The notes beneath the pieces are model-generated. The model ran no database searches. It had not been told where the DNA came from and saw nothing but the letters and a program-made list of their open reading frames with translations. The translations under genes and the position numbers were made by a program. A DNA stretch of 64,000 nucleotides, from NCBI RefSeq assembly GCF_006345805.1, contig NC_042998.1, positions 105,524,001 through 105,588,000 of the forward strand. The letters are read 5' to 3'. This stretch comes from Octopus sinensis. Its lineage: Eukaryota. Shown here in pieces: positions 3,151-61,139 of the stretch (position 1 is its first letter; each line of letters begins with the position of its first letter).

Positions 3151-3218
<68 letters not shown>
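3151..3218. repeat. (TTA)n tract: tail/target of R4/Dong element
   Basis: Direct repeat abutting the element 3' end. Confidence 0.95.
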
Positions 3219-3221
<3 letters not shown>

Positions 3222-3315
3222 TAGTTTTATTTTTATAGCGTGCTTTCACTTCACTACCGAGCGCAGCTCTGTGTGCCTTGGGTATGTGCTGTGATTTGTT
3301 GTGATGCTCTGATGG

Positions 3316-4419
3316 TTATTGTATGGAAAGTGTTCTGCGTAGGATGTGTGCAGTGCCTAGTAGTGCAATTTTCTGTATGTTATATGTGTTTGTAAGTCCT
3401 GGTGTTTTTGTTATGTATTTGTCTGAATATTTTTTTATCATGCCTAATGCACCTACTATGATAGGAATTGTTTCTGTTTTCAGGTTCCACATTCTAGTTA
3501 CCTCTATTTCCAGGTCTTTGTATTTTGAGAGTTTCTCCATTTCTTTTAGAGACACGTTGTCATCTGCCGGTATTGATACATCAATTAGAAAGCATTTTTT
3601 TTCTTCATGATCTCTGACAACTATATCTGGTCTGTTGGCCTTAATTTCTCTATCTGTGTGTATCGGCATATCCCAGAGTATGGTTGCTTTCTCGTTTTCT
3701 GTGACCTTTTCTGGTGTGTGCCTATACCATCTTTTTTCTGTTGTTATTCCATAATGTTGGCATAGCTTCCAATGTATGTAGGTTCCAACTCTGTCATGTC
3801 TGTGAATATATTCCTTCTTAGCTAGGACTGGGCAGCTAGAGATAATATGATTTATTGTTTCTTGTCCATCTCCACATATTCTGCAGTTACTTGTAATATT
3901 TCTTTTCATTACATGTTTTTGGTAATTTCTGGTGGGGAGGCTTTGGTCTTGTGCTGCAATTAAAAATCCCTCTGTTTCTGCTTTGAGTCCTGAGCTTCTC
4001 AACCATTGCTGGGATTTTTCTTTGTCTATTTCTTTTGCGTTTAGTTTAGTGCAGTATTTACCATGAAGGGGCTTTTCTTGCCATCGTTTTATCATGGCTC
4101 GTTGCTGTTCTATTTTTAGTTTGGATTTCATTTGTTTTATAGCTTTTGTTGTTTCTTCATCATCTTCTTCTTCTTCTTTGTGTTTATTAGGTGGTATGAT
4201 TTCATGTTTGTATTTGTCAGCTTCCTTAAATACTGAGAACAGTTTTTTGTTTTGCTCGTGTTTTGCTGCTATCTGGATCAGTTTTCCTTCCTTCTGAAGT
4301 AGGTATTTTTGCAGTCCTATGGTGGTTATTTTATAGTAGTTTTCCAGCTGTATAAGGCCTCTACCACCTTCTATACGTTGTATATATAGTCTTTCTATGT
4401 CAGATTTTGGGTGATGCAT
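3316..4419 (-). CDS. C-terminal half of R4/Dong ORF (thumb, CCHC zinc knuckle, restriction-like endonuclease); frame is open upstream to ~4600
   Basis: CRICGDGQETINHIISSC; RHDRV; NRPDIVVRD...FLIDVSIP; IIVGALG; upstream in frame KEYYRRVRSILKTELNAKNKIIGINTLAVPV. Confidence 0.9.
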   Translation of the reverse strand: MHHPKSDIERLYIQRIEGGRGLIQLENYYKITTIGLQKYLLQKEGKLIQIAAKHEQNKKLFSVFKEADKYKHEIIPPNKHKEEEEDDEETTKAIKQMKSKLKIEQQRAMIKRWQEKPLHGKYCTKLNAKEIDKEKSQQWLRSSGLKAETEGFLIAAQDQSLPTRNYQKHVMKRNITSNCRICGDGQETINHIISSCPVLAKKEYIHRHDRVGTYIHWKLCQHYGITTEKRWYRHTPEKVTENEKATILWDMPIHTDREIKANRPDIVVRDHEEKKCFLIDVSIPADDNVSLKEMEKLSKYKDLEIEVTRMWNLKTETIPIIVGALGMIKKYSDKYITKTPGLTNTYNIQKIALLGTAHILRRTLSIQ

Positions 4420-4568
4420 CCTAGATCCTGTCAGTATTTTTCTTGTTTTCCTATCTATTTTGGACAGTTCATTTCGTGTCCAGTTAAGGATGTTGTAGCT
4501 GTAACTTATAACTGGGACAGCTAAAGTGTTGATACCTATTATCTTGTTTTTAGCATTGAGCTCTGTTT

Positions 4569-5195
4569 TTAGTATTGATCTAACTCGTCTATAATATTCT
4601 TTTTTATTTTCTCTTTCATTTGTGTGTGTTGTGTCTTATCTAGTTCATGAATTCCTAAGTATTTGTAAGTTTGGCTTTGGTCTAATTCTTTTATTTCATT
4701 GGTTTTATCTAGTGTGATGTTGTTACTCTTAACTAGTTTTCCTCTTTTCATGGTTACTTTGGCGCATTTTTCTAATCCAAATTTCATATCTATTTCTTTG
4801 GTAAATCCATGAACTGTCTTTAATAGTGTTTCCAGCTGTTTGTCATTTGCAGCGTATAGTTTTAGGTCATCCATATATAAAAGGTGGCTGTTCGTTTTGC
4901 CGTAACATTTATATCCGCATCCAGTTCTATTTAGCATATCAGATAGAGGTGACAGTGCCAAGCAGAAAAGGAGTGGAGAGAGCGTGTCTCCCTGGAATAT
5001 TCCTCTTCTAATGGGGATGTCTTTGGTTTTCATGAGTCCCTCTTTTGTTTGGAGGTGTAGGACTGTTTGCCATTTATTCATAGAGTGCTCTATGAATTTT
5101 ATGATTGTTGGTGCTACTTTGTTAATGGCTAGTGTTTCGAGGATCCATGTGTGGGGGATGCTATCAAACGCCTTTTTGTAGTCAATCCAGGCCAT
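4569..5195 (-). CDS. Reverse transcriptase part of the same R4/Dong ORF, ended by a 1-nt deletion in an A-run at 4600-4605
   Basis: AWIDYKKAFDSIPH, GIFQGDTLSPLLF, LLYMDDLKLY, FGLEKC, YKYLG. Confidence 0.92.
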   Translation of the reverse strand: MAWIDYKKAFDSIPHTWILETLAINKVAPTIIKFIEHSMNKWQTVLHLQTKEGLMKTKDIPIRRGIFQGDTLSPLLFCLALSPLSDMLNRTGCGYKCYGKTNSHLLYMDDLKLYAANDKQLETLLKTVHGFTKEIDMKFGLEKCAKVTMKRGKLVKSNNITLDKTNEIKELDQSQTYKYLGIHELDKTQHTQMKEKIKKNIIDELDQY

Positions 5196-5234: not shown

Positions 5235-5262
<28 letters not shown>

Positions 5263-5265
<3 letters not shown>

Positions 5266-5535
5266 TAGTTTCATTTTTATAATGTGCTTTCACTTCACTA
5301 CCAAGTGCAGCTCTGTGTGCCTTGAGTATGTGCTGTGATGTGCTGTGATACTCTTATGGTTACTGTATTGAAAGTGTTTCGCATAGGATGTGTGCAGTGC
5401 CTAGTAGTGCAATTTTCTGTATGTTATATATATTTGTAAGTCCTGGTGTTTTTATTATGTATTTGTCTGAATATTTTTTTATCATAGGAATTGTTTCTGT
5501 TTTTAGATTCCACATTCGAGTTACCTCTATTTCCA
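5263..5535 (-). mobile_element. Older short 3' fragment of the same R4/Dong family
   Basis: Aligns to 3219-3512 with substitutions and a 21-bp deletion; its (TAA)n tail is 5210-5262. Confidence 0.92.
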
Positions 5536-6593
5536 TGGCTTGAAAGCACGATAAAAATAGCAGTGAAATTAGTATTTATGAGCTTGGGGTCAGTAGCGTA
5601 GCAAACTTAAACATCCAACCATTGAGTCTTAGGGTATTGTAAGTCTCAATGAAGGATAAGAAACCAAAACACAAATTAACCAAACAAAATGGCAAATAAC
5701 ATAATAAAGACAAAAATTCCTTATACTTTAGGGAAATTAAAACATCTTTTCTTATGTTTTCTATCCTTCTTCACTTCCAAGAGATATGTTTATTATAGTG
5801 CAACTTTCATTACTTCTGTGCTATCTTAGGAAAGATGATGTAGTATGTCAGAACAGATATTTGTATGAATGTTTTATGAGTATTTTTCAAGTATGAAATA
5901 AATTTAAGTATGAAGTAAACTTGAGAGAAAGTAGTGCATTATATATTTCAATTAAATAAAACAGCTGCAAATAAAACTGTGTAATATATCAGATCTGCAG
6001 ATCTGAGTAAATCAGTATTAGAAAATTTTAGCCTATTAACATCATGAATCACAGAGTTATTTCCAATTCAATTCCATTACTTAACCCACAAAATTACAAT
6101 GTACTGAGGTAAAGTAAAGAATAAAACATTTATACTCAAGAATAAGAGTAACAAAGTTGGTGACAGAACATTAAAGTGCCATTCTGATTCTTATAACTGT
6201 GTTGTAAAGTGGATTCCTCCCACTGGTGTGATGTGTGACTGCTGTTGTACTGAGGTTGCTGTTTTATGCAAGTATCTACAATAGTTACTATAACCATCAG
6301 ACACCATTGTATCTCTTCGTACTGCAATAGCAATACACTAACTTCTGTCTTACTATTGCTGATAGCTCCACAAGACACTGACTGTCAACACTCTACTCTT
6401 TGACTCTCGACCCTCCCTTGATGATCAACTACTGTTCTATTTATAATGGCTGGTTCCTACCACTTTTTACCGGGAGGGGTATACAGCTTCACTATACAAA
6501 CATCTCCCCTTTTAATTATTTTATTTAACAATCAATTTCTTTTATTCACCCCATCGCCTCCTTTATACATACATACATACATACATACATACA

Positions 6594-6626
<33 letters not shown>

Positions 6627-6642
6627 GTATATAAATATATAT

Positions 6643-6700
6643 ATCATCATCATCATCATCATCGTTTAACGTCCGTTTTCCATGCTAGCATGGGTTGGAT
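6643..6700 (-). mobile_element. Very short LINE 3'-tail insertion ((GAT)n family)
   Basis: (CAT)n-CGTTTAACGTCCGTTTTCCATGCTAGCATGGGTTGG with 14-bp palindrome at 6680-6693. Confidence 0.8.
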
Positions 6701-21239: not shown

Positions 21240-21485
21240 GAGGCCTTGGCATCTGTGTCGGTGACATGTAAAATGCAGCAATCGATCGTGGCTGTTTGCC
21301 AGCCCTCTCTGGCCCCTGCGCTGGTGTCACAAAAAAAGCACCCACTACACTCACAGAGTGATTGGCATTAGGAAGGTCATCCAGCTGTAGAAACACTACT
21401 AGATCAGACTGGTGCAGCGTTCTGGCTTCCCAGACCAACCCATGCTAGCATGGAAAACGGACGTTAAACGATGATGATGATGATT
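21240..21485 (+). mobile_element. LINE 3'UTR with (GAT)n tail
   Basis: CCATGCTAGCATGGAAAACGGACGTTAAACGATGATGATG. Confidence 0.85.
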
Positions 21486-22729: not shown

Positions 22730-23265
22730 GACAACTGAAGTACGCTCGCAAATTAATACTACAAAAACTTAGCGACAGAAAGTAAATTAAAAACCAATCG
22801 TAAAATATTGAGTTTTCTCGAATTTTTGCTTAATTGGGGGTCAAATTGAAAGAAATTTATATGCCATGACCCAATGGAATGTACTTCGAAAAATCATAGG
22901 TAAATTCCAATTGAAGAAATTGTGTGAGGAGTAAATCGTTATGTATTTATTTGTTTCTGTTTCCTGTGTATTTTTTTGAGTAGTGGTTGGAGGTACACTT
23001 GCAAAGGGAAAGTAGAAGAAAGTGTGGTAACAGAAGGAGTGAAGCAGTTGAAATTAGAGAGGCAAATCGTAAAATATTTAGTTTTCTCGAATTTTTGCTT
23101 AATTGGGGGTCAAATTGAAAAAAATTTATATGCCATGACCCAATCGAATCTACTTCGAAAAATCATAGATAAATTCCAATTGAAGAAATTCTATAGGGTA
23201 CAATTGTATTAAAAAGAAACATAGTCACAGGCAGAGAAAATCTGCCTATTATCAAAAGAGATATC
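22730..23265 (+). mobile_element. Probable non-autonomous element with a 126-bp internal duplication
   Basis: 22796-22921 vs 23065-23190 about 96% identical; ends CCTATTATCAAAAGAGAT. Confidence 0.5.
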
Positions 23266-30504: not shown

Positions 30505-30845
30505 CATCATCATCATCATCATCGTTTAACGTCCGCTTTCCATGCTAGCATGGGTTGGACGATTTGACTGAAGTCTGGCAAACCAGATGGCTGCACCAGA
30601 CTCCAATCTGATCTGGCAGAGTTTCTACAGCTGGATGCCCTTCCTAATGCCAAACACTCCAAGAGTGTAGTGGGTGCTTTTACGTGTTACCGGCATGAGA
30701 GCCAGTCAGGTGGTACTGGCAACGGCCACGCTCAAACGATGTTTTTTTATGTGCCACCTGCACAGGAGCCAGTCCAGCATCACTGGCAACGACCTCGCTC
30801 GAATATTTTTTATGTGCCACCAGCACAAGCGCCAGTAAAGCAATG
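30505..30845 (-). mobile_element. RTE-family 3'UTR with ~67-bp tandem units
   Basis: (CAT)n tail, palindrome, repeated TTTTATGTGCCACC...GCCAGT-n8-ACTGGC. Confidence 0.85.
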
Positions 30846-35998: not shown

Positions 35999-36473
35999 AT
36001 TACAGCAGATGTATACATCAACCAACTGGATGAAATGCTGAGTGAACTTGCAATTAAACAACCAAGATTGGTCAACAGAGACAAGCCAATTCTCTTGCAA
36101 GACAATGCTAAACAAAAGGTTGCACAAAGAATACTACTCAATTTACAGCAACTAAACTTGGAAGTACTCTGTCATCAACCACTATATTTACCAGACCTTG
36201 CACCAACTGACTATCATGTTTCCCAGGCATTGGACAACTTTTTTGCAAGGAAAAACTTCAAATCTGAAGAAGATGCAAAAACAGCCTTTTGTGATTTCAT
36301 CACCTCTTACTCTCCAGAATTCTTTGTTGCTGGCATAAATAACCTACCAATAAAGTGGCAAAATTATGTTGATAATTTAGGTGCATACTTTGATTAACTA
36401 CATTGCTTTTTGTTGAGATAGAGTAAAATAATCTTTCAATTCAAAATCGGACATTTCATTCTTAATGACCTGA
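35999..36473 (+). mobile_element. Mariner (DD34D) 3' half with right TIR
   Basis: ITADVYINQLDEM...ILLQDNAK...LYLPDLAPTDYH...GAYFD*; ends CTTAATGACCTGA|TA. Confidence 0.9.
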
Positions 36474-36493
36474 TATATATGTGTATGTATATA

Positions 36494-36725
36494 TCATCAT
36501 CATCATTTAACGTCCGTTTTCCATGCTAGCATGGGTTGGACGGTTCAACCGGGGTCTGGTAAGCCATGGAGGCTGCACCAGGCTCTAGTCTGATTTGGCA
36601 GTGTTTCTACAGCTGGATGCCCTTCCTAACGCCAACCACTCCATGAGTGTAGTGGGTGTTTTTTACGTGCCACCGACACAGGGGCCAGAGAAAGCTGGCA
36701 AACAGCCATGATAGGTTGGTGCTTT
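36494..36725 (-). mobile_element. LINE 3'UTR, (GAT)n-tail family
   Basis: TTTAACGTCCGTTTTCCATGCTAGCATGGGTTGGACGG. Confidence 0.85.
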
Positions 36726-41427: not shown

Positions 41428-42205
41428 GTCATTGTTCAGTCTTATTTTAAGTTTTCTTGCCAATAGAGAAAGATCTGGTTTCTAACCTAGATCCAAGACT
41501 CCTTCATTGGAATTTCAACATCAAGGTATTTTTGCATGTATGTGTGTATATATGCAGTATTTAGAGTTAATCCATGTACAGATTTGTATGTTTTGTTTTA
41601 TGCATGTATTCTTATGCATATTGTTGCATGTCTAGACATGCACGTGTATATGTAAATGATAAATTTCTGGAAGGTTTTACAGAGTTTTAGTTCCAGTGAT
41701 GGCATGGATCTGCAGTCTTCGAAACAGGTTTCTTCTTTCTGGTTTTGAGAAGACTAATTTCTCAAAATCAGTACTTAGGCAGTGTGTTATGTATCCCAAT
41801 GCCCTAATAATTGCAGGTATAAACCTGAACCTGTAATCTGGGTAGAATAACTGTAGATTTCTCAATAGTTCAGTATAGGTGTTTTCTTTATCACTGATCT
41901 TTAGCCTTATGCTAACATCCTCTGGGCAGCTGATTTCCACAGCTGTACACAGTTTCTCTTCTCCATCCATTTTATTGAGTTTTACAGGGGCATATCCACC
42001 TGTATGCCTTCTTATTATGAGTTGCTATGGCCATACTGTGGGTTCTTATTTCCTTGGCCTCAGGGTAATCCTTCAGATGGATTTCATTATACAGTATCTG
42101 GGATATAATATCATGTCTTGACAGATAATACCATGGTGACACTTTTGGACAACTGCTTCTGATGTAGGTGATATCTACAGTGTTAGTTCCACAAAGTCTG
42201 CACCA
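41428..42205 (-). mobile_element. Second RLE-type non-LTR family: degenerate C-terminus and 3'UTR
   Basis: CRLCGTN...SSCPKV...RHD; EEKLCTAVEISCP...KEN.Y.ELLRNLQ...PAIIRALG. Confidence 0.75.
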
Positions 42206-42334
42206 GTAATTACATTGTTGTGTTTTCCTTGTATCTCTGTCTATTTTTGTGTATCAGGTATTAGGTTGATATTTTCTATATGTATGTATGTATATCATTA
42301 CTCAGTTTATTTACTCTCTCTTTTCCTCTTTTAC

Positions 42335-43225: not shown

Positions 43226-45823
43226 TATACCAGGATTGTGTGGATGTGTTGGCGTGTGTATATAAATGTCTGAATATCTGTACATTCTCTTTTTCTGCTT
43301 CCTCAATTACATTTTTCATCATTCAGTCATTCGACTTTTTTCTCTTTCATTGTATTTCAATTTCTTTTTTATTCTCCTTTTGCTCCAACTATTCAAACTT
43401 CAATCAATACATGTCCTTTTTTCAAGTGATTTTTAATTGCAGTGGTATGCACTTTTGGTTTGCAGCTGACTAATATTCCATATACATATACACATACAAT
43501 GAGTGTGTGTGTGTGTATGTGTACATATATATGTGTATATAAATATACATACTTATGCATACATATATGCATATGCACAGATATACATATATACATATGC
43601 ATGTGTATACATATGTATGTGTATACATACATACTTATTCATACATGTATGTATATACACATTTATACATATATACATAAATACATATAAATATGTGTGT
43701 GTAAAATAATATATAAATAAACCACTTGCTGGAAACTAGGTCAGAAAAAATGATATACTTCAAAATTGGTTTCTGTCAGTTTGAAAATTATTTATGTTTA
43801 AAATTGTTTCCTCGATAGATTGCTGTCAAATTTTCTCTTTGCAGATCATTCTCTTTGAAATACAATTCTTAACAATTTTCACTCTGAATTTTATCCCAGT
43901 CTTTCTCAGTTAATTTGTTTGTATTGTTGTAAAGGATGTAAAGGTTATATGGTCATATTTGATCTTGTCTGATATTGGTTTTTATACATTTTTCTGTTTC
44001 CATTCTCATTCTTGTTGGCTTTTGTATTTTCACTGACTTTGTCTGAAGTAGAAGTACATTTTCAGTAACGCCTCTTTTCCAGAGTTCTCTGAACTGAAGG
44101 TGGAATGGAGGAAGTTATCCTCAGATCTGATAACTGGTCTAAATGCTTGCAACAGAGAGGACATTATCTTTAAGCAACAGACTGTGGTGCAAAACTAGGC
44201 AAAAGATTTACTCTACTACCAAGAATTGGAACTGTCTTTCACACAGTCTTTCACATAATTTCTGTTCATTATATTCCCTTTACAAATTTTTGCAAAGCTT
44301 ATGTCACTCACTTTTAAAGTTTCAACTTAATTAATAACAAATAACATCGACTTGACATATTGAATACTTGTATGAAGAGAAAGGATGTAGACAATATATG
44401 ATGTTAGTATAGTTATAATTATTCAGTTTATTCAGCCATCTTCAGCTTTAAGAATGCTTCATCTGTCAGACATCTATGCAGAACTATGAAAAGAAGCAAT
44501 GTTGAGATCTCACTGAATTAGTTGGTTAATACAGTCTATGAGAGTCACACACAGATAATAATAATTCACAACTGAAGAATAACCTTATACTGCAAGAGAG
44601 AAAAGCATTCTGTAAGGAGTCAACTCTGTAAAGACTCTATTCAGCAAGGAGTCTACTTCGTAAGGTTGTTGACATTAGGAAAGGCATCCAGCCATAAAAA
44701 CCATGCCAAAACAGACAGTGAAGCTTGGTGCAGCCTTCTGGCTTACCAGATTCTGTCAAACCATCCAACACATGCTAGCATGGACAATGGATGTTAAATG
44801 ATAATGATGATGATGATGATATGCATCTCATATTCTAGGTACCCAACTGCAATAGCTGACATCATTCCACCTATTTATTGCTGAGATTTTGCTTTCTCAA
44901 GACAGGTTTATCAGCTGACTTTTATTTCACATGAAGATAATCCAGAAAGGTACACTGAGTTCTAGTCAACTACTTCAGAAGAAAAGTCAATCTGTATATA
45001 CACTGCTTGAGGACCCAAGAACAAAGAAAATTGCACCCTAGTAACATATTTTATCAGGAGACTTGGAGAACAGGGTATGTCCCTTTCAGCATAATCTGCA
45101 GTATATTTGACAAGACTCTCCAAATTAGAAAACTATTCATACTGAAATAGCCAACTATATTCCTTAACAAGAAGACAATTTTACACTACTGTTATCAATG
45201 GGATTCCTTATTCTTTCATCACTGTTTCCTAATTTTACTGGAATTTCTAATGAAAGAAAAGAAGAACCCTATAATCTATGATGAGACAGTTGTCCCTAAT
45301 TCAGCAGTTGTCTAATAAAACCTAACAATGTCTAGAATATCTAACAGTCATCTGACTACTGGATCCATCATGAGACCAGAACTGACAAATAAGAAGAAAC
45401 TTTGTATGTTGTCCAATGATGCTGCAATACAATAGGTTCACCAACAATAGAAATCTTCATTTGGTGCTTTTGTCAACAACGTCTATTCCTTGGTATTATA
45501 TCTTTTTGTGGAAAATAACTTATTGCATTATCCTCTGTTTTTAATTCTCCACTTGGCTGTTCATTGTGGTTTTCAATATCTTGCTTCTTCCCATTGGGCC
45601 AAATTTGTTTCATTTCAATCCAGGCTCATAATGCTTCAATACATTATTATAGGTATATATGGCAATTCTGACCTCCTGTATGTTGGAAATCTGACTGATT
45701 GAAATTAAAAATAAAATTTCAATTTTTAGAGATTCAAGACATTTTTCAAAGTTTTCCAAACGTGGTTTTGATTTCCAGTAATTAATAATAAATACTCATC
45801 TGAGATGGGAAAGATTGCTTTAC

Positions 45824-45860
<37 letters not shown>

Positions 45861-45862
<2 letters not shown>

Positions 45863-46227
45863 TGATGTATCAATGCCAGTAGATGACAACATTTCTCTAA
45901 AAGAAATGGAGAAACTTTCAAAATACAAAGACCTGGTAATAGAGGTAACTCGAATGTGGACTCTAAAAACAGAAACAGTTCCTATCATAGTAGATGCATT
46001 AGGTATGATAAAAAAATATTCAGACAAATGCATAACAAAAACACCAGGACTAACAAATATATATAACCTACAGAAAATTGCACTACTAAGCATGGCACAC
46101 ATCCTACGCAAAACACTTTCAATACAGTAACCATAAGAGCATCACAACAAACCACAGCACATACCCAAGGCACACAGAGCTGCGCTCGGTAGTGAAGTGA
46201 AAGCATGGTATAAAAATAAAACTACTG
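45861..46227 (+). mobile_element. Third R4/Dong copy (3' 367 bp) in (TAA)n
   Basis: IDVSMPVDDNISLKEMEKLSKYKDL...LRKTLSIQ*; 3'UTR matches 3219-3315; TAA runs on both sides. Confidence 0.93.
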
Positions 46228-46974
46228 AATAATAATAATAACAACAACACCAACAATGACAGAAAGGACAATAATGATGATGATGACAATGATGACAATG
46301 ACAATGATGATGATGATGATGAGAATGACAATGATGATATTATTTAAAAAACTTTTGTGTATGTATATCTTTCATTAATGATGAGACCAACAATTTTATG
46401 TGGAGGCCTATTAAAAATGGAAACTTTCTAAATGATATTAGAATAAACCTCATATACAAAGTGGGTCTCTTTTATTGCATGACTACAGTAAAAATTGTAA
46501 ATGTGGAGGAGAGAATCTGAACAAGAGACTGTTTGAAATGTGATGATACTCTTTACATATGTGAAATTTATACCACTCTATTTATAGCCTATATAATTCA
46601 AACAAACTGAGCCACTTGCAAAAGTGTCATAAGGAATATAATATTCACTAGTAGTCGAATATGACATTTAAAATTCTACAAGAAAGATTCTGTACCAGAA
46701 GTCAGTGGAAGATTTTTGAATGGAATTAAATTACGAAAGAGAATCCAGCAATGAATGTTTGATTCTGCATTTAATATTGTTTCTCTCTTCTACATTTCTT
46801 TTTCTTTTCTCTGTCCTTTCATTTTGCTCTTCTACTCATAGTTTATAAAACCTAAAGAAGTCTATATTTAATTTTAAAATTCAAAATTTCAGAATTTTGT
46901 AATTGCTATTTTTAATTCCTAAAACATATTTTAAATTTTTAACAAAAATTTCTTTAGTGCAAATCTAAAGGCCA

Positions 46975-54704: not shown

Positions 54705-54804
54705 TATCTATCTATATGTATGCATATATGTTTATATGTATGTATATATATATATGTGTGTGTGTGTGTACGTATGTATGCATGTATATATGTATATATA
54801 TATA

Positions 54805-54861
<57 letters not shown>

Positions 54862-54884
54862 ATATATATGCATATGTGTTTATA

Positions 54885-54933
<49 letters not shown>

Positions 54934-55036
54934 ATTTATATGTGCATATATATAAATATATATAACACACATAGACATATACACATATATAAGTATATAT
55001 ATGTGTGTGTTTATATACACACACACACACACACAT
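54705..55036. repeat. Long compound (TA)n/(TG)n/(CA)n tract
   Basis: Direct; source of the YI/CV/HT ORFs. Confidence 0.95.
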
Positions 55037-55787
55037 ATTTGATGAGGATTCTCAATTATTAAGTCAATCAATTTGTGTAGCAGTCTCCTTATTGGTTAAT
55101 AATTTATCAATGTTAAAAATAAACTAAGCTCTATACTCTGTATCCCCATACACACACCCCTCAGCTATCAAATTCAATCTTCTTGAGGTCTACTTATATT
55201 TTTGATTTAATATTCGGCAAGTCTATGAAGCTATATTTTATCACAAATTATTATTCTCCTCACAGATGTAGAACTTGTCTAAATGTTCATCTCATTGATG
55301 GGATCTGATCAATAACTTTAAGTATCAGCTGCTTAAGTCATAGTAGTGCCTTTTGTCCTTTACATTCATTCATATTGCACTTTAAGAAAAGCAGGTAATA
55401 TTTTCTTACATTGTCAGAAAGCAATTTGAACAGGCCTATTCTCTCCCTGATTGCTTTATGTCTTTGGCATCAAATTATTTTCAGCTTTGAGTTAGAACTG
55501 AGTTAGAACTGGTAACAAGGTAACAAGATAACTATGGTTTTCTTATACAGTATTGATTACTCTGTTATATTTCAATGTAGCTAGTTCAAATTCTTCAGAG
55601 TTAAAATATTAGAAGTTCTTAAACATAGCTATGGATAATAGAGTGGTAGCAGAACAGACTTCTGATTATTAAAGATACTTTTCATAGGAGCAAGGTCGAA
55701 GCTGTCAAGAACCATGTAAAGACTGCCTATAATCCATCTACTAATGATTCTAACACTATTTTCAACCATTCAGAATATTTTCCCACT

Positions 55788-55998
55788 AAGGCAGTGAGCT
55801 GGCAGAAACGTTAGCATGCTGGGTGAAACAGTTAGCAGTATTTCATCTGTCAGTACCTTCTGAGTTCAAATTCTGCTGAGGTCGACTTTGTCTTTCATCC
55901 TTTCAGGGTCGATAAATTAAGTACCAGTTTCGTACTGGGGTCGATCTAATCGACTGGCTCCCTCCCCAAAATTTTCGGGCCTAGAGTAGAAAAGAATA
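55788..55998 (+). mobile_element. SINE family A, near full length; a degenerate inverse copy follows at ~56075-56290
   Basis: GGCAGTGAGCTGGCAGAAACGTTAGC...GAGTTCAAATTC...GTAGAAAAGAATA. Confidence 0.88.
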
Positions 55999-56339
55999 GT
56001 TTCCCACAAGTAACAAAGTCAGATTTCAATAAGAAATAACAATAAAATTTTACAGAGACACAAGACAATGATTCTTTTTAATTTTGGCTCAAAGTTAGCA
56101 ATTTTGAAATATGAGGTCTAGTCAATTACATCAGTGCTAGTGCTCAACTGGTATTTATTTTAACCACCTTAAAAGGATAAAGAGCAAAGTTAATCTCAGT
56201 GAGATTTGATCTCAGTATGTAATGATTTATAAAAAAAGGCCACTGAGTATTTTGTTCAATATGCTAACAATTCTGCCAACTCATTACCTTGAGACACAAA
56301 AAAGGTATTAAAACTTGACTAAAAAAACTCAATCTCTAC

Positions 56340-56975
56340 TCTCTCCAATGCCGCTGGGAATGCTACATCATTTGTGTGATGTGGAAAATATTCCATCAAT
56401 ATTACATAAATGATGTTGGCATCAGCTTTAAAATCCATCCAAGACTTGACTTCTATGCTATCCACACACTACAAAAATCGAACTCAGGACACATAACAAC
56501 ATTATATCACAACTACATTACCTCAAACGGTTCAGCTCTCGTTAATACCATACCAAAATATGTGAAAATGGAAATGGATCCCATAAAATTTCTTCAAAGT
56601 AGCTGTCTGTAGTTATCCCCTTTCTCTTTGATTTTTGAAAACATATTCACATACTTTTCCTTGTCAGTCCCAAGCAACTATATCTGGTTTATTTTTAACA
56701 TTGATAAATTATTAACCAATAAAACTGCTACACAAATTGATTGACTTAATAATTGAGAATCCACAGTTAGGGGAGCAAGCCCATAAAATTTCTTCAGCTA
56801 CTGGACAAATTTCTTCAAAAACCCCGGACCAACCTCCTACACCTGAATATGTCTCCAACAATAATAACTCTTTGCTAGAGTAAGCCATGATGCCTCATAT
56901 ATGAACTAAAAGACTTCACCAGGAAGTACTATTAAGTTAGACATGGTCTGGACCTATACTGGCCGAAACCTATCA
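56340..56975 (+). mobile_element. CR1-group LINE 3' end interrupted by a 183-bp insertion
   Basis: WKIFHQYYINDVGISFKIHPRL...MDPIKFLQ|LLDKFLQK-PDQPPTPEYVSNNNNSLL; tail (ATCAAAGTT)2. Confidence 0.75.
56597..56779 (-). other. Locally templated chimeric insertion with 17-bp TSD
   Basis: Inverted copies of 60856-60952 and 55046-55124; CCCATAAAATTTCTTCA at 56580-56596 and 56780-56796. Confidence 0.92.
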
Positions 56976-58009
56976 AAGTTATCAAAGTTATATACTTTGT
57001 AAACTACTTCATGTTTATGCGTTCTCTTTGTATTTTCATCATTGATATTACAGATAATGCACACTATCAAGGCAGATGCAAGATGAATTTCGTTTTGCCC
57101 ATATTCATTTTGTGCTGAAATCCATTCATCACCACTTTTGCTCTTCCCATCATTTCAAGGATGATACAATAAGCACCAATAATACATGTAGACACCTGTG
57201 TAGTTAAGGAGTCTGTTTTAAAACCAATGGATTCAGACCTATTGTTTGGTGCCTTGGGCACTTGACTTCTACTTTAGACTGACCAGTGTTGCAAGTAGAA
57301 TTTGGTGGAAGAAAACTGTGCAGAAGCCAGCCGTACATGTGTGTGTGTGTGCATCTTCTCTGAAAGTTGGCACGAGTGCAAAACTAGTGTTCTTCAAAGG
57401 AAGTCCTTTGCAACATTAAAGTCCATGCACCAATTTACCAACACTCTGTTGTTAATCATACTATCAAAAATGCTGTGAACTAATGATTATTCTATTAGAA
57501 ACCAATGGGCAAGACATGAACATCCCTTGAGCAATTCCTCAATAATGTACTCACTCATAAAGGTACAACACTTCTTACAAATTACTTCCGCATTTAAGGA
57601 AATTGAGTTAGCTACTAAATTATTAAAGTACTTGGATGATAATCAAGGATTATATGTTCAAGCTCTTCCAATTTTTTATTCTCTCACTTAATTATATATT
57701 AATGAGTGTTTCAATTAAATATATAAGATTTGCTTCTGTACTGCTGAGTAATATATATTTAAAATCTTTAGTCATAAATAACCTTGTTGAAATTCCATAG
57801 TATTTCAGCATCTTCATCAGACTTTATTGTCACATCTCTCACCAGTCATCTTGTCTTTTTTTTTCTTTCACCACTTTTATTTTGCCATCCAAACCATTCA
57901 TTACTGAATAGCACTCTCTTACTTAGCAGTCTAGAATTCTTGTTTCATGGTTTGTGTTTGTTGGGTTATATCCTAACCATTTATCCTTATATCTGCCAGT
58001 CTGTCTGTC

Positions 58010-58320
<311 letters not shown>

Positions 58321-59304
58321 TTCACCCATCTATCCATTCAAAATAGATTATTTTACAGGTTCAGGAGTGGTTGTGTGTTAAGAAGTTTGCTTCCCAACTT
58401 ACATGGTTCCAGGTTCAGTTCTACTGCATGGCACTGAGAGGCTCACAAAAATTTAGGCTACAATCCTCACGCTTGTAACTAAGGGCAGGTGTCTCTGATG
58501 TTATGAATATTCCAAAGAGAATATTTCAAGATGGTCTTTCTGTAATTCTGTTTATTTTAGCATTGTCAATCTTTTTACAAAAATCCAATGACTACATGCT
58601 AGTTCCTACAACTACTTGATACACAAATGTAACTCATAATTTCTTTGTGGATGATCTGAAGGTCTATACCAAAAAATGGTTGTGGTGCCAAAAAGCTGCT
58701 GGAGTCAATACAACTTTCAGCTGACATAAGAATGGAATTTGGTCAAAAAAAGCAACAGTATTTGATTGCTGAACATGGAAAATGTGTCCCTTAAGCTTAA
58801 AACTTGTGCATCAATGGTTTCACTTCTGTTCCACACAAAGAATAATGTATTATGACCAAAGATAGAGTGACTAAAGAATATCATGCCAGGATTGGAAAAA
58901 TATGGTAGTTGGAACTCTCCTCTTGCAACAAGACAATATCCCATGATACATTTATATTATCAGTGTTGATTTGAGATACTTGACTAGTCTACAAAGAAAA
59001 TCCACTCCATAGACATTTAAACCTACAAAATCCTAACATCAAATGGAAACTTCCATGGAAATAATGAAATCAACAGTCTCTGTCTAAAAAGAGATGAAAG
59101 TGTTAGAGATTTGATATCAGTGGAGACAGCCTTTGGATGTCATAAACTATCTCTCAAGACAGCACCTGCTACACAACAGGAGCAAAAACAGTTAGACTAA
59201 CATACCCTAAAGAAGACCTGAATGTGTAATACTCAACAGGCAAAAACAAAAATTATGTATGAGTATGTTTCCAAAAACTTGAAAATGATAATAATATCTT
59301 CTCT

Positions 59305-60185
59305 ACTATGGACACAAGACCTGAAATTTTAGGGGTAGCAGCTAATCAATTACATCAACCCCAGTGCTTAATTCAGGGGTCAGGGAACTTTTTTAATCAG
59401 TTACTCCAAAATATATTTATTTACACTGATGTTACACCCTTGATTTGAAAGGAAGGAAGTCATAGATTTTTTTAATTCAAAAGTTTTATTGAAACTATTT
59501 ATATATAGAATAAATATAAATATAAAAAGTTTAAAACAAATGCGATAAATAAATTAATATCTTCATTATGAAACAAAAAGATTTTTTCTAGAAACATTTT
59601 CACTTCAGGTTTTGGAGAAATGATGTTTCATTTTTGTTACAATTACACCAAAATCAGAGCATTTTGATGTCAGAATAATTTGAATACAGTCTTCGATATT
59701 CAGTTGATTTCATTAAAGAGATAAATTGAAAAACTACTAAAATCTAAACAAAGCAAAAACGTGTGTCAAAAAATAAGGTTAAGGCAGATAATAGACAATT
59801 GACAAATAATATCGGTTTAGTCACTTGGCAACACCTTAGCAACTAAATTGTTTGTAGTTCAAAATAGCGTGATGTTTCCTAAAAGATGTCCATTAATTAC
59901 ATTTGACAGATGCAGTGTTGCCAGAAGAAAAATTTCTGTCATAAAAAGGAACAGGCTTTTTATATAATTTTACATATATCTAATGAGTCCTCATTGCCCC
60001 CATGCATTTAATTTTTAACCCACTAGGAGTAATTTACCCCTGTTCACTGACTTCTGGCTTAGTTGGTACTTATTTCATCAACCCCAAAAGGATGAAAGAA
60101 GTCAGCATTGGTAGAATTTGAACTCAGAATATAAAGACAGATGAAGTTTTAGTAAGCTTTTTGTCCACAGTGCTAACATTACTGC
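59305..60185 (-). mobile_element. SINE family A split by a hAT element
   Basis: ...CATCAACCCCAGTGCTTAATT [insert] GCTTAGTTGGTACTTATTTCATCAACCCC...TTTGAACTCAG. Confidence 0.8.
59374..60056. mobile_element. Non-autonomous hAT element (683 bp)
   Basis: Termini CAGGGGTCAGGGAAC / GTTCACTGACTTCTG; 8-bp TSD GCTTAATT / GCTTAGTT. Confidence 0.82.
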
Positions 60186-60429
60186 CAACAGACTGTCTTG
60201 AAGATGACACTAACATCAACATGCAGGGCATCCTATCTTGTGACCTCTGCAGTATGTGACACTTCGAAGGTCAAGCATTTTGCAACTCAAGAGCAGGAGA
60301 TTACTACAAAATACCTAATAAATGAAAGAGACAGTGAACTCTTGGAGCCCCAGTTTGTAACCGAAACAGTCAATTATGTCTCATTTCTGTGGAAGGTATC
60401 ACATATGTGAATAGCAGATGCTGAAAGGT

Positions 60430-60695
60430 GTCAGCAAAGTACTATCTTTGAATGCAACACGATGTTCTCACTAAAACAATATACAAAGCTATCAAGGTGG
60501 CAAGCATGCTGGGTGAAATGCTTACCGGTATTTCGTCTGTCTTTACATTCTGAGTTCAAATTCTGCTGAGGTTGACTTTGCCTTTCATTCTTTCGGAGTT
60601 GACAAATTAAGTAGTAATTGCATACTGGAGTCGATCTAATCAACTGGCTCCCTCCCCCAAAATTTTGGGTTTTGTGCCTAGAGTAGAAAAGAATA
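60430..60695 (+). mobile_element. SINE family A
   Basis: GAGTTCAAATTCTGCTGAGGTTGACTTTGCC...CCTAGAGTAGAAAAGAATA. Confidence 0.85.
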
Positions 60696-61139
60696 TACAA
60701 AGCCATCTGAAAAGAGACTGTCTTGGGAGAGATATAGAGAAACACACTCACATACACACACACACACACACACCTGTTGTTGAACACATACATAAACATC
60801 AACACAAGTAATATTGGTGGAATATTCCCATCAAGCTTCTCCTAAGTGGAAGCATAATAAACCAGATATAGTTGCTTGGGACTGACAAGGAAAAGTATGT
60901 GAATATGTTTTCAAAAATCAAAGAGAAAGAAGATAACTACAGACAGCTACTTCAAAATCTTCAGTTTCTGTACACAGATTCTAAATTCACTTTTATATCA
61001 AACTAATGTATGATCTTTATTATGTGAGTAAACTCCTCAGTGACAATCCAGGGCTTTCAGAAGCAAAAAAATAGAAAAGAACCTAAGTATATGCATACAC
61101 ACACACATGCACACACACACACACACATATATATGCATA

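What the first reader, a model, noticed from the sequence alone, without database searches (positions are those of the whole stretch)
56580..56796. 183-bp insertion stitched from two distant local templates, with a 17-bp TSD
Seen in the sequence: CCCATAAAATTTCTTCA occurs at 56580-56596 and 56780-56796. Deleting the 200 bp restores the host CR1-group LINE frame (MDPIKFLQ-LLDKFLQK). The insert is (a) 56597-56693, the reverse complement of 60856-60952 (95/97 identical, including the TGA stop of that dead LINE); (b) 56687-56762, the reverse complement of 55046-55124 (identical except one short indel/substitution patch); (c) 17 bp of unknown origin. Parts (a) and (b) overlap in a 7-bp microhomology, AATAAAC, present in both donors. 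The donors lie 5.7 kb apart on either side of the target. The 8-mer CAGCTACT occurs at both the donor end (60944-60951) and the target (56795-56802). Inference: either DNA template switching (MMBIR or Pol-theta type), or reverse transcription of a local plus-strand transcript primed at the nick, starting at 60952 and jumping to 55124. The order of the pieces, the LINE-sized TSD and the fact that both mismatches in (a) are adjacent A>G changes (GAAG to GGGG, as ADAR editing would leave) fit the RNA route. Two bases are weak evidence.
Basis: partly seen in the sequence, partly recalled or inferred. Interest (0 to 1): 0.8.

Follow-up and report, generated by a model that had tools for sequence, protein, structure and literature searches.

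The report
Patchwork insertion copied from nearby DNA
A 183-bp insert in a dead LINE is stitched from inverted copies of two sequences 4.3 kb downstream and 1.5 kb upstream and is flanked by a 17-bp duplication; it is a clean but ordinary scar of template-switching repair, with no sign of function.

Summary
An exact 17-bp direct repeat (56580-56596 and 56780-56796) brackets 183 bp. That insert consists of rc(60856-60952) at 95/97, rc(55046-55124) identical except one 4-nt-to-1-nt patch, a 7-nt overlap (GTTTATT) at their joint, and 14-17 nt with no template in the window. Removing 200 bp makes the host LINE colinear with an independent family member (JGI protein P0001, locus L001).

Both donors occur only once elsewhere in the window. 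Donor X sits inside a degenerate LINE whose homology runs past both of its edges, so the donor copy is the original and the insert is the derived copy. The joint is not a canonical splice on either strand. The insert has no poly(A), LINE or SINE tail and no terminal inverted repeats.

Best reading: one recent templated insertion made by polymerase template switching from local templates at a staggered break, of the MMBIR/FoSTeS or filler-DNA type. The AA>GG change is derived in the insert but is a single event, the donor RNA shows no notable fold, and the shared 8-mer is same-sense. Copy number outside this window could not be tested. This is a known kind of event and of low-to-moderate interest.

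The parts
56580..56596 (.). Left copy of the 17-bp target-site duplication, CCCATAAAATTTCTTCA
   Evidence: Exact. It is one of only two occurrences in the window on either strand.
56597..56693 (+). Insert segment a, an inverted copy of donor X (60856-60952)
   Evidence: 95/97 identical, with a tandem CC-versus-TT difference at 56618-56619. BLAST E = 1e-43.
56687..56693 (.). 7-nt microhomology GTTTATT at the a/b joint, present in both donors
   Evidence: Read directly. The donor + strand reads AATAAAC at 55118-55124 and 60856-60862.
56687..56762 (+). Insert segment b, an inverted copy of donor Z (55046-55124)
   Evidence: Identical except a single A in place of GGAG. E = 1e-30. It may extend to 56765/55043 with one mismatch.
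56763..56779 (+). Filler ACAGTTAGGGGAGCAAG of unknown origin
   Evidence: No match with up to 3 mismatches in the window. Only chance-level 9-mers were found.
56780..56796 (.). Right copy of the 17-bp target-site duplication
60856..60952 (+). Donor X, an internal piece of the degenerate LINE B. It encodes NKPDIVAWD*, followed after a frameshift by ...KIKEKEDNYRQLL.
   Evidence: Protein and DNA homology to other LINE copies in the window (3316-4419 and 41788-42214) runs across both edges of X. X is therefore original at this position.
55046..55124 (+). Donor Z, unique non-coding sequence beginning 5 bp from a long (TA/TG)n microsatellite
   Evidence: The microsatellite is at 54705-55002 by TRF and runs on to about 55040 in the sequence.
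56319..56995 (+). Host element LINE A, the 3' end of a CR1-like LINE with an (ATCAAAGT)n-type tail. It is interrupted by the insert.
   Evidence: 65% identity to P0001 over 56319-56600, continuing at 56780-56895. The L001 DNA is colinear with the empty-site join and has the same tail.
60356..61003 (+). C-terminal part of LINE B, with its zinc-finger region at 60356-60448. It is interrupted by a SINE at 60503-60695 and an (AC)n tract, and it contains donor X.
   Evidence: tblastn and tblastx against the LINE copies at 3.3-5.2 kb and 41.8-42.2 kb. A possible RT fragment of the same element lies at 58482-58667.
54705..55040 (.). (TA)n/(TG)n microsatellite abutting the point where copying of Z ends or begins
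   Evidence: Tandem Repeats Finder and the sequence itself.

Best explanation
This is a single, fairly recent, non-homologous templated insertion made from local DNA. A break with a 17-nt stagger, or a stalled nascent strand, arose in the 3' end of a dead CR1-like LINE.

The inferred sequence of events is as follows:
1. A free 3' end primed synthesis on the + strand 4.3 kb downstream and copied 60952 down to 60856.
2. It slipped off and re-annealed through 7 nt (GTTTATT/AATAAAC) 1.5 kb upstream of the break, then copied 55124 down to about 55046.
3. It stopped at the edge of a long (TA/TG)n microsatellite and acquired 14-17 further nucleotides.
4. It was rejoined to the original duplex 17 nt behind the point of departure, which left the 17-bp duplication.

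The reverse order of synthesis, starting from the other broken end, is equally possible. This is the MMBIR/FoSTeS, synthesis-dependent end-joining or 'filler DNA' class of event.

**Shown:** the anatomy, the local origin, the direction of copying (donor to insert), the microhomology, and the absence of retroposon or transposon hallmarks.

**Inferred:** that the template was DNA rather than RNA, which polymerase acted, and the order of steps.

No function is implied. The insert is a neutral scar. Its one consequence is two new inverted-repeat pairs, 97 bp with copies 4.3 kb apart and 79 bp with copies 1.6 kb apart.
For: - **The insertion is real.** The TSD is exact and the segment identities are as reported. 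The empty-site join is colinear with the independent LINE copy P0001/L001.
- **The donors are local and single-copy in the window.** Each occurs once elsewhere, and they are among the 11 pairs at 90% identity or more in 64 kb. They lie 1.5 and 4.3 kb from the target, on either side of it.
- **The direction is donor to insert.** Homology of LINE B to other copies crosses both edges of X, and at the two mismatches the donor keeps the state seen in an outgroup copy.
- **The internal joint carries 7-nt microhomology**, the signature of re-priming after a template switch.
- **Both segments are inverted relative to their donors**, as in the MMBIR-linked templated insertions described in human germline and tumour genomes. 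Those include inserts built from two or three templates (PMC8421209). Such small templated insertions are taken as marks of replicative template switching (PMC3638133).
- **Copying of Z ends or starts 5 bp from a roughly 330-bp (TA/TG)n tract**, a plausible stalling site.
- **Both differences from the donors are multi-nucleotide changes**: a tandem TT>CC and a GGAG>A patch. That fits error-prone synthesis better than later point mutation. Error-prone synthesis in BIR/MMBIR is from my own knowledge and was not checked here.
- **Retroposition hallmarks are missing.** There is no tail and no canonical splice at the joint. The window's LINE copies with identifiable ends use microsatellite tails.
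Against: - Only one of the four junctions shows microhomology. The target-to-X junction is flush, and the two junctions around the filler cannot be judged.
- Both segments have the same orientation and are colinear with the genome. A single template molecule carrying an internal skip predicts this outright. Independent DNA switches would give it only about one time in four.
- A 17-bp TSD is also what LINE-endonuclease nicks would give.
- The template distances (1.5 and 4.3 kb) are far larger than the 100 bp or less used to define MMB-TI events.
- DNA and RNA templates leave the same sequence, so nothing computed here separates them.
- Copy number of the joined sequence outside this 64-kb window is unknown.
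Confidence: 0.5

Rival explanations
1. The template was RNA. A local transcript of either strand spanning 55.0-61.0 kb was reverse-transcribed at a nick in the target. The enzyme could have been a LINE reverse transcriptase (target-primed) or a repair polymerase with RT activity. It jumped 5.7 kb within the same RNA at the 7-nt homology.
For: - The 17-bp TSD is in the range that LINE endonuclease nicks produce.
- Both pieces have the same orientation and the genomic order, as one RNA molecule with an internal skip would give.
- The two mismatches in X are derived on the insert side, and they read A>G in + sense.
- Reverse transcriptase looks available. The window holds a LINE copy with open 367-aa and 208-aa ORFs that is 92% identical in DNA to a contig from another data set. 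LINE expression in octopus brain is reported in PMC9115989; that this window is from an octopus is my unverified impression.
- Chimeric LINE-mediated insertions of unrelated RNAs are known (bioRxiv 10.1101/2025.02.02.635956).
Against: - Neither end carries poly(A) or a LINE/SINE 3' tail in either orientation. The window's LINE copies with identifiable ends have a specific tail, and the one copy whose upstream flank I read abuts a matching microsatellite.
- The joint is not a canonical splice in any register on either strand.
- Ordinary retroposition scatters copies genome-wide, so landing between its own two source segments requires a special in-cis mechanism.
- AA>GG is one event.
- The first A has a 5' G, which ADAR disfavours (from my own knowledge).
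- The donor RNA context folds no better than shuffles (z = -0.72).
- If the RNA was the - strand, the change reads U>C, which is not an ADAR change.
Confidence: 0.27
2. The insert was copied or captured from a pre-joined Z-X source that is not in the window. Candidates are a haplotype or paralogue of this region carrying a 5.7-kb deletion between the two AATAAAC repeats, or a free DNA fragment ligated into a filled-in staggered break.
For: - The joint is exactly what a microhomology-mediated deletion between the direct 7-mers at 55118-55124 and 60856-60862 would give.
- The two outer junctions are flush, as in end-joining capture.
Against: - It adds an extra unseen event.
- A distant paralogue landing inside the very interval that it lacks would be a coincidence.
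- No trace of the joint was found outside the window. One chance 25-mer turned up in the metagenome scan, and there was no true hit in 1.84 billion representative proteins. Those collections hold little or no DNA of this organism, so this is weak evidence.
Confidence: 0.12
3. It is an ordinary mobile element. One version is a short non-autonomous element of a multi-copy family. The other is an internally deleted, MITE-like derivative of a 5.9-kb element whose ends are Z and X and which hopped locally.
For: - A TSD is present.
- Internal deletions at short direct repeats, and local hopping, are typical of cut-and-paste transposon derivatives (from my own knowledge).
Against: - There are no terminal inverted repeats; the best terminal match is 6 nt.
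- A 17-bp TSD fits no cut-and-paste superfamily I know of.
- The interval 55046-60952 has no TSD of its own.
- X's edges are internal to LINE B, which continues colinearly on both sides. X therefore cannot be an element terminus.
- There are no further copies in the 64 kb.
Confidence: 0.03
4. It is an assembly or library artefact, such as a chimeric molecule formed by polymerase strand-switching during amplification.
For: Amplification chimeras are typically inverted, local and joined at short overlaps (from my own knowledge).
Against: - The structure needs three or four precise switches and then a return to the original template with an exact 17-bp overlap.
- It differs from both donors by mutations.
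- It would have to survive in a consensus assembly.
- No reads are available, so this cannot be tested directly.
Confidence: 0.04

Closest known systems
MMBIR/FoSTeS templated insertions (MMB-TI; Hastings/Lupski model; Osia et al. 2021, PMC8421209)
   Same: - The insert is an inverted copy of nearby sequence.
- It can be built from two or three templates in series.
- Switches occur at microhomology.
- The donors stay intact.
- Synthesis returns to the original template.
- Such events are found as germline variants.
   Different: - Templates here are 1.5 and 4.3 kb away, not within 100 bp.
- Only one junction shows microhomology.
- The event is framed by a clean 17-bp duplication.
- The host appears to be a mollusc (probably an octopus, unverified), not human or yeast.
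Filler-DNA / synthesis-dependent end joining at double-strand breaks (plants, Drosophila SD-MMEJ, Pol-theta-mediated end joining); from my own knowledge
   Same: - Patchwork inserts are copied from sequences near the break.
- They are often inverted.
- They are joined by short homologies and mixed with untemplated nucleotides.
   Different: - Typical Pol-theta inserts are about 3-30 nt and are templated within tens of bases of the break.
- Here the insert is 97 + 76 nt, copied from kilobases away.
LINE-mediated chimeric retrocopies made by RT template switching (U6/L1-type chimeras; Law and Burns 2025, bioRxiv 10.1101/2025.02.02.635956)
   Same: - The TSD is of LINE size.
- Two unrelated source segments are joined in the same orientation.
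- Extra nucleotides at one junction are tolerated.
   Different: - There is no LINE 3' part, no poly(A) and no family-specific tail.
- Both sources flank the target within 4.3 kb instead of lying elsewhere in the genome.
- The sources are non-genic, repeat-derived sequence.
Short-range template-switch mutations (Loytynoja and Goldman; PMC7954356 listed)
   Same: Local inverted copying by a transient strand switch during replication.
   Different: Those events span tens of bases, replace sequence in place, and do not combine two templates from opposite sides of the site.

Membership tests
MMBIR/FoSTeS-type templated insertion | The inserted sequence is a copy of other genomic sequence, and the donor is left intact | tested here: met
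   Identities are 95/97 and 76/79 to donors that remain in place. X is colinear with its LINE on both sides.
MMBIR/FoSTeS-type templated insertion | Microhomology at the template-switch junctions | tested here: inconclusive
   The X/Z joint has 7 nt. The target/X junction has 0 nt. The two junctions at the filler cannot be scored because the filler's template is unknown.
MMBIR/FoSTeS-type templated insertion | The template is close by (within 100 bp in the MMBSearch definition) and copied in inverted orientation | tested here: inconclusive
   Inverted orientation is met for both segments. Distance is not met under the strict definition, at 1.5 and 4.3 kb. Kilobase distances are accepted in the wider FoSTeS/MMBIR literature (from my own knowledge).
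LINE target-primed retrocopy or chimeric retrocopy | Target-site duplication of roughly 5-20 bp | tested here: met
   17 bp, exact.
LINE target-primed retrocopy or chimeric retrocopy | A 3' end carrying poly(A) or the mobilising LINE's own 3' tail | tested here: not met
   The insert ends are AAGTAGCTG... and ...GGGGAGCAAG, with no A-run or microsatellite in either orientation. Tails of LINE families in the window are (ATCAAAGT)n, (TAA)n, and hairpin + (GAT)n.
LINE target-primed retrocopy or chimeric retrocopy | Evidence of an RNA intermediate, such as intron removal at canonical splice sites | tested here: not met
   No register of the 7-nt overlap gives GT-AG, GC-AG or AT-AC on either strand.
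LINE target-primed retrocopy or chimeric retrocopy | A first-strand nick matching the endonuclease's preferred site | not testable with these tools
   The preferred sites of this genome's LINE endonucleases are unknown. The old SINE copies in the window are too diverged to read their TSDs.
Pol-theta end-joining templated insert | A short insert (a few to about 30 nt) templated from the immediate flanks of the break | tested here: not met
   The segments are 97 and 76 nt, copied from 4.3 and 1.5 kb away.
Cut-and-paste transposon or MITE-like deletion derivative | Terminal inverted repeats and a superfamily-specific short TSD | tested here: not met
   The best inverted match between the two ends is 6 nt. 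The TSD is 17 bp. The putative parent interval 55046-60952 has no TSD, and its right end is internal to a LINE.
Dispersed repeat family | Multiple copies of the joined sequence | tested here: inconclusive
   There are none in the 64-kb window. One exact-match scan of metagenome contigs gave a single chance 25-mer, and a scan of protein representatives gave no true hit. The organism's own genome was not available to search.

The most novel reading that the evidence does not exclude
The insert is a germline cDNA of a local nuclear transcript that was written back within its own locus at a nick. Its AA>GG change would then record A-to-I editing of that RNA. That would be a genomic fossil of edited RNA becoming DNA, in what appears to be a cephalopod (not verified), a group known for heavy RNA editing.
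Probability: 0.05. Interest if true: 0.8.

Novelty: new member of a known kind. Interest (0 to 1): 0.3.

Why it matters
On its own this is a neutral scar in a dead repeat. Its value is as an unusually legible example. Both donors, the target, the microhomology, the duplication and the direction of copying can all be read from one 6-kb stretch. That makes it a good seed for a genome-wide screen for TSD-flanked inserts whose best donors lie within about 10 kb.

Such a screen could measure how often multi-template, kilobase-range template switching happens in the germline of a repeat-rich invertebrate. The orientation and order statistics of many events would also show whether any of them pass through RNA.

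Tried and rejected
1. **Target on the minus strand.** I first suspected that the target was really a minus-strand copy of the same LINE family as donor X, because of 'CPVAEEILW'-like and 'ILMEY'-like strings. I rejected this. P0001/L001 show that the + strand reading is the true LINE C-terminus.
2. **A reciprocal templated patch.** A 29-nt inverted similarity links 56376-56405 and 60808-60834, which lies 22 nt from X. It scores above all 400 control chunks. I rejected it as a patch because each segment is native to its own LINE family. A fold-back on it would not bring X next to the target.
3. **Splicing of a local transcript.** Rejected; no canonical sites exist in any register on either strand.
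4. **Inversion with staggered breaks.** Rejected; the 17-mer is a direct repeat and has no inverted copy.
5. **A 5.9-kb transposon with a MITE-like derivative.** Rejected; see the rival explanations.
6. **A third template for the filler.** None was found.
7. **Reading TSD lengths from SINE copies** to calibrate what 'LINE-sized' means here. The copies are too old, and their flanks are microsatellite.
8. **External copies.** Exact look-ups of ten window ORFs found nothing. The metagenome scan gave one chance match. The search of protein representatives with the peptide spanning the X-Z joint gave one spurious hit to a repeat protein.
9. **Pfam on the stop-free pieces around target and donor.** This was uninformative, as was Rfam on the window.

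Full report
**What is in the sequence**

The 17-mer CCCATAAAATTTCTTCA occurs exactly twice in the window, at 56580 and 56780. Both copies are on the + strand, and there is none on the - strand. Four components lie between them.
- Segment a, 56597-56693, is the reverse complement of 60856-60952 at 95/97. The only differences are adjacent, CC versus TT at 56618-56619. BLAST gives E = 1e-43.
- Segment b, 56687-56762, is the reverse complement of 55046-55124. It is identical except that a single A replaces GGAG. E = 1e-30.
- The two segments overlap in GTTTATT, which is present at both donors.
- The remaining 17 nt read ACAGTTAGGGGAGCAAG. This drops to 14 nt if the Z match is extended by 3 nt with one mismatch. 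They have no template in the window with up to 3 mismatches, and no exact run longer than a chance 9-mer.

Each donor is otherwise unique in the 64 kb. In a whole-window self-comparison only 11 pairs reach 90% identity or more. Two of them are these, and the X pair has the third-strongest E-value. The observation therefore stands as written and is far beyond chance.

**The host element and the empty site**

The + strand reading frame 56319-56609 found one homologue among 5.8 billion proteins. This is P0001, a 152-aa ORF on a 1-kb JGI metagenome contig (L001), at 65% identity.
- P0001 residues 26-118 align to 56319-56600, residues 112-125 to 56780-56821, and residues 125-150 to 56818-56895. The homologue therefore runs straight through the site, and the only repeated part is the 17-bp duplication.
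- Joining the two flanks gives a sequence that aligns to L001 DNA continuously across the junction with no net indel.
- L001 also shows the family's 3' end...CCGAAACCTATCAAAG(TATCAAAG)n. The window has the same end at about 56965-56995.

I could not confirm the clade. Pfam has nothing for this C-terminus, and 'CR1-like' rests on the C-terminal motif and the microsatellite-type tail, judged from memory.

**The donors**

X lies in a second, unrelated, degenerate LINE on the + strand, here called LINE B.
- Its translation KHNKPDIVAWD*QGKVC matches KANRPDIVVRDHEEKKC of a LINE copy that still has open ORFs at 3316-5195.
- The downstream KIKEKEDNYRQLLQNLQFLYTDSKFTFIS matches KISDKENTYTELLRNLQLFYPDYRFRFIP of a copy at 41788-41967.
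- DNA homology to that copy starts upstream of 60856 and continues to about 61000.
- LINE B's zinc-finger region is at 60356-60448, separated from X by a SINE and an (AC)n tract.

Two consequences follow. First, X is in its native context at 60.9 kb, so the copy in the insert is the derived one. Second, the TGA inside X is a premature stop, not the element's natural one.

At the two mismatched positions the donor (GAAGAT) agrees with the outgroup copy (GAAAAC) in having AA. The insert's GG is therefore derived.

Z is unique, non-coding sequence. It begins 5 bp from a roughly 330-bp (TA/TG)n microsatellite.

**What it is not**

- **Not a spliced transcript.** Across all eight registers of the 7-nt overlap, no GT-AG, GC-AG or AT-AC pair exists on either strand. 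The - strand misses GT...AG by one base.
- **Not a transposon.** The ends share at most 6 nt in inverted orientation. The interval 55046-60952 has no flanking duplication. Its right end is internal to LINE B.
- **Not a staggered-break inversion.** The 17-mer is a direct repeat only.
- **Not a canonical LINE/SINE-type retrocopy.** Neither end carries an A-run or a microsatellite tail. The LINE families whose 3' ends can be read in this window end in (ATCAAAGT)n, in (TAA)n, or in a hairpin plus (GAT)n. The 45860 copy abuts a microsatellite that matches its tail.

**Mechanism**

The simplest account is one event of template-switching synthesis at a break or stalled end.
1. A 3' end at the target copies the + strand at X, from 60952 to 60856.
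2. It dissociates and re-primes through 7 nt at 55124.
3. It copies to about 55046, stops at the microsatellite and gains 14-17 nt.
4. It is rejoined 17 nt behind its point of departure.

The mirror-image order, starting from the other end, is equally possible.

This is the architecture described for MMBIR-linked templated insertions. Those are inverted copies, sometimes of two or three templates in series, with microhomology at the switches, and they occur as germline variants (PMC8421209). Small templated insertions at breakpoints are taken as the signature of replicative template switching (PMC3638133).

Both differences from the donors are multi-nucleotide lesions: a tandem substitution and a 4-to-1-nt patch. 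That suggests they arose during error-prone synthesis rather than later, but this is inference.

**DNA or RNA template**

The sequence cannot decide this.

In favour of RNA:
- The TSD is LINE-sized.
- The two pieces share orientation and genomic order, which one RNA with an internal skip predicts. Independent DNA switches would give that only about one time in four.

Against RNA:
- There is no tail and no splice.
- Both sources flank the target within 4.3 kb, and ordinary retroposition does not explain that.

- Colinearity holds for transcripts of either strand.
- AA>GG is a single event, and it would read U>C if the - strand were the template.
- The RNA around X folds no better than shuffled sequence (z = -0.72).
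- The shared 8-mer CAGCTACT is same-sense, as is a further AAAAT(TT)CTTCAG similarity that I noticed between the target and the donor flank. A same-sense match cannot prime an inverted copy. Two random 24-nt windows of this sequence share an 8-mer 1.8% of the time.

My estimates are: DNA template about 0.5, RNA about 0.27, an unseen pre-joined source about 0.12, and artefact or mobile family about 0.07 together.

**Limits**

The collections available hold little or no DNA of this organism.
- Ten window ORFs are absent from the protein collection.
- A full HMMER scan of 1.84 billion representatives with the peptide that spans the joint gave only a spurious hit to a repeat protein.

The repeat content looks to me like an octopus genome: about 20 copies of a roughly 200-bp SINE, a second family with a CCATGCTAGCATGG hairpin, and abundant microsatellites. 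That is recollection, not a test.

**Verdict**

This is a real, well-resolved, one-off templated insertion from local donors. It is a known kind of mutational event seen in an unusual organism and at unusually long template range. It has no evident function, and its main use is as a template for a genome-wide screen.

Noticed in passing
window 3188-5195 (-), with a further fragment at 5235-5554 (-) and a 5'-truncated copy at 45860-46247 (+): A LINE copy with open ORFs of 208 aa (RVT_1) and 367 aa (a zf-RVT match at E 1.1e-05, just under Pfam's cut-off, plus a C-terminal NRPDIV...KY motif). It ends in a (TAA)n tail. It is 92% identical in DNA to a Logan contig (SRR7158634) and 81% identical to GCA_024449705.1. 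Its protein homologues (50-55% identity) occur in starfish, corals, shrimp and fish. The 45860 copy sits directly after an (AAT)n tract, which suggests tail-matched integration.
   Followed up: partly
window 6641-6700, 30505-30559, 21435-21484, 36493-36540, 44763-44822, 1242-1291: A second repeat family whose terminal roughly 50 nt are 90-100% identical between copies. In the orientation shown it reads (ATC)n-GTTTAACGTCCGTTTTCCATGCTAGCATGGGTTGG, which on the other strand is a perfect palindromic hairpin followed by a (GAT)n tail. It looks like the conserved 3' recognition end of a young LINE/SINE pair.
   Followed up: partly
window 22796-22921 and 23065-23190: A local direct duplication of 126 bp at 96% identity, with copies 269 bp apart. 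Its E-value (7.6e-53) is the strongest of the pairs at 90% identity or more, ahead of the X pair.
   Followed up: no
window 56376-56405 versus 60808-60834: A 29-nt inverted similarity (26/29, two gaps) between the host LINE and LINE B, lying only 22 nt from donor X. It scores above all 400 control chunks, yet each side is native to its own family. It is probably chance, and I found no mechanistic role for it.
   Followed up: yes
window 56617-56622 and 56768-56773: The only substitution in segment a (TCTTCT to TCCCCT) creates the exact reverse complement of AGGGGA in the filler. Both motifs are preceded by AGTTA. G/C runs are rare in this 65% A+T sequence, so the mismatch and the filler may be mechanistically linked, for example by snap-back copying. 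However, only 6 nt are involved.
   Followed up: partly
window, about 20 sites (for example 55788-55998 +, 56067-56290 -, 60503-60695 +, 47-49 kb cluster): About 20 copies, 70-85% identical, of a roughly 200-bp SINE (...GAGTTCAAATTC...CTTTCATCCTTTCGGGGTCGATAAATTAAGTACC...). Two of them sit just upstream of the host LINE and one interrupts LINE B. Rfam found no RNA family in the window.
   Followed up: partly
window 36035-36397 (+): A 120-aa ORF that looks by eye like the C-terminal part of a mariner-type transposase (...PDLAPTDYH...). Pfam gave no hit, so this is unconfirmed.
   Followed up: partly
L001 642-890 (-): In the JGI contig that carries the LINE homologue, the LINE tail abuts a sequence that by eye encodes a GIY-YIG-like motif (...CDALYVGQTGRRLADRFAEH...). 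That would suggest a Penelope-like element next to it. This contig is from a different organism than the window.
   Followed up: no
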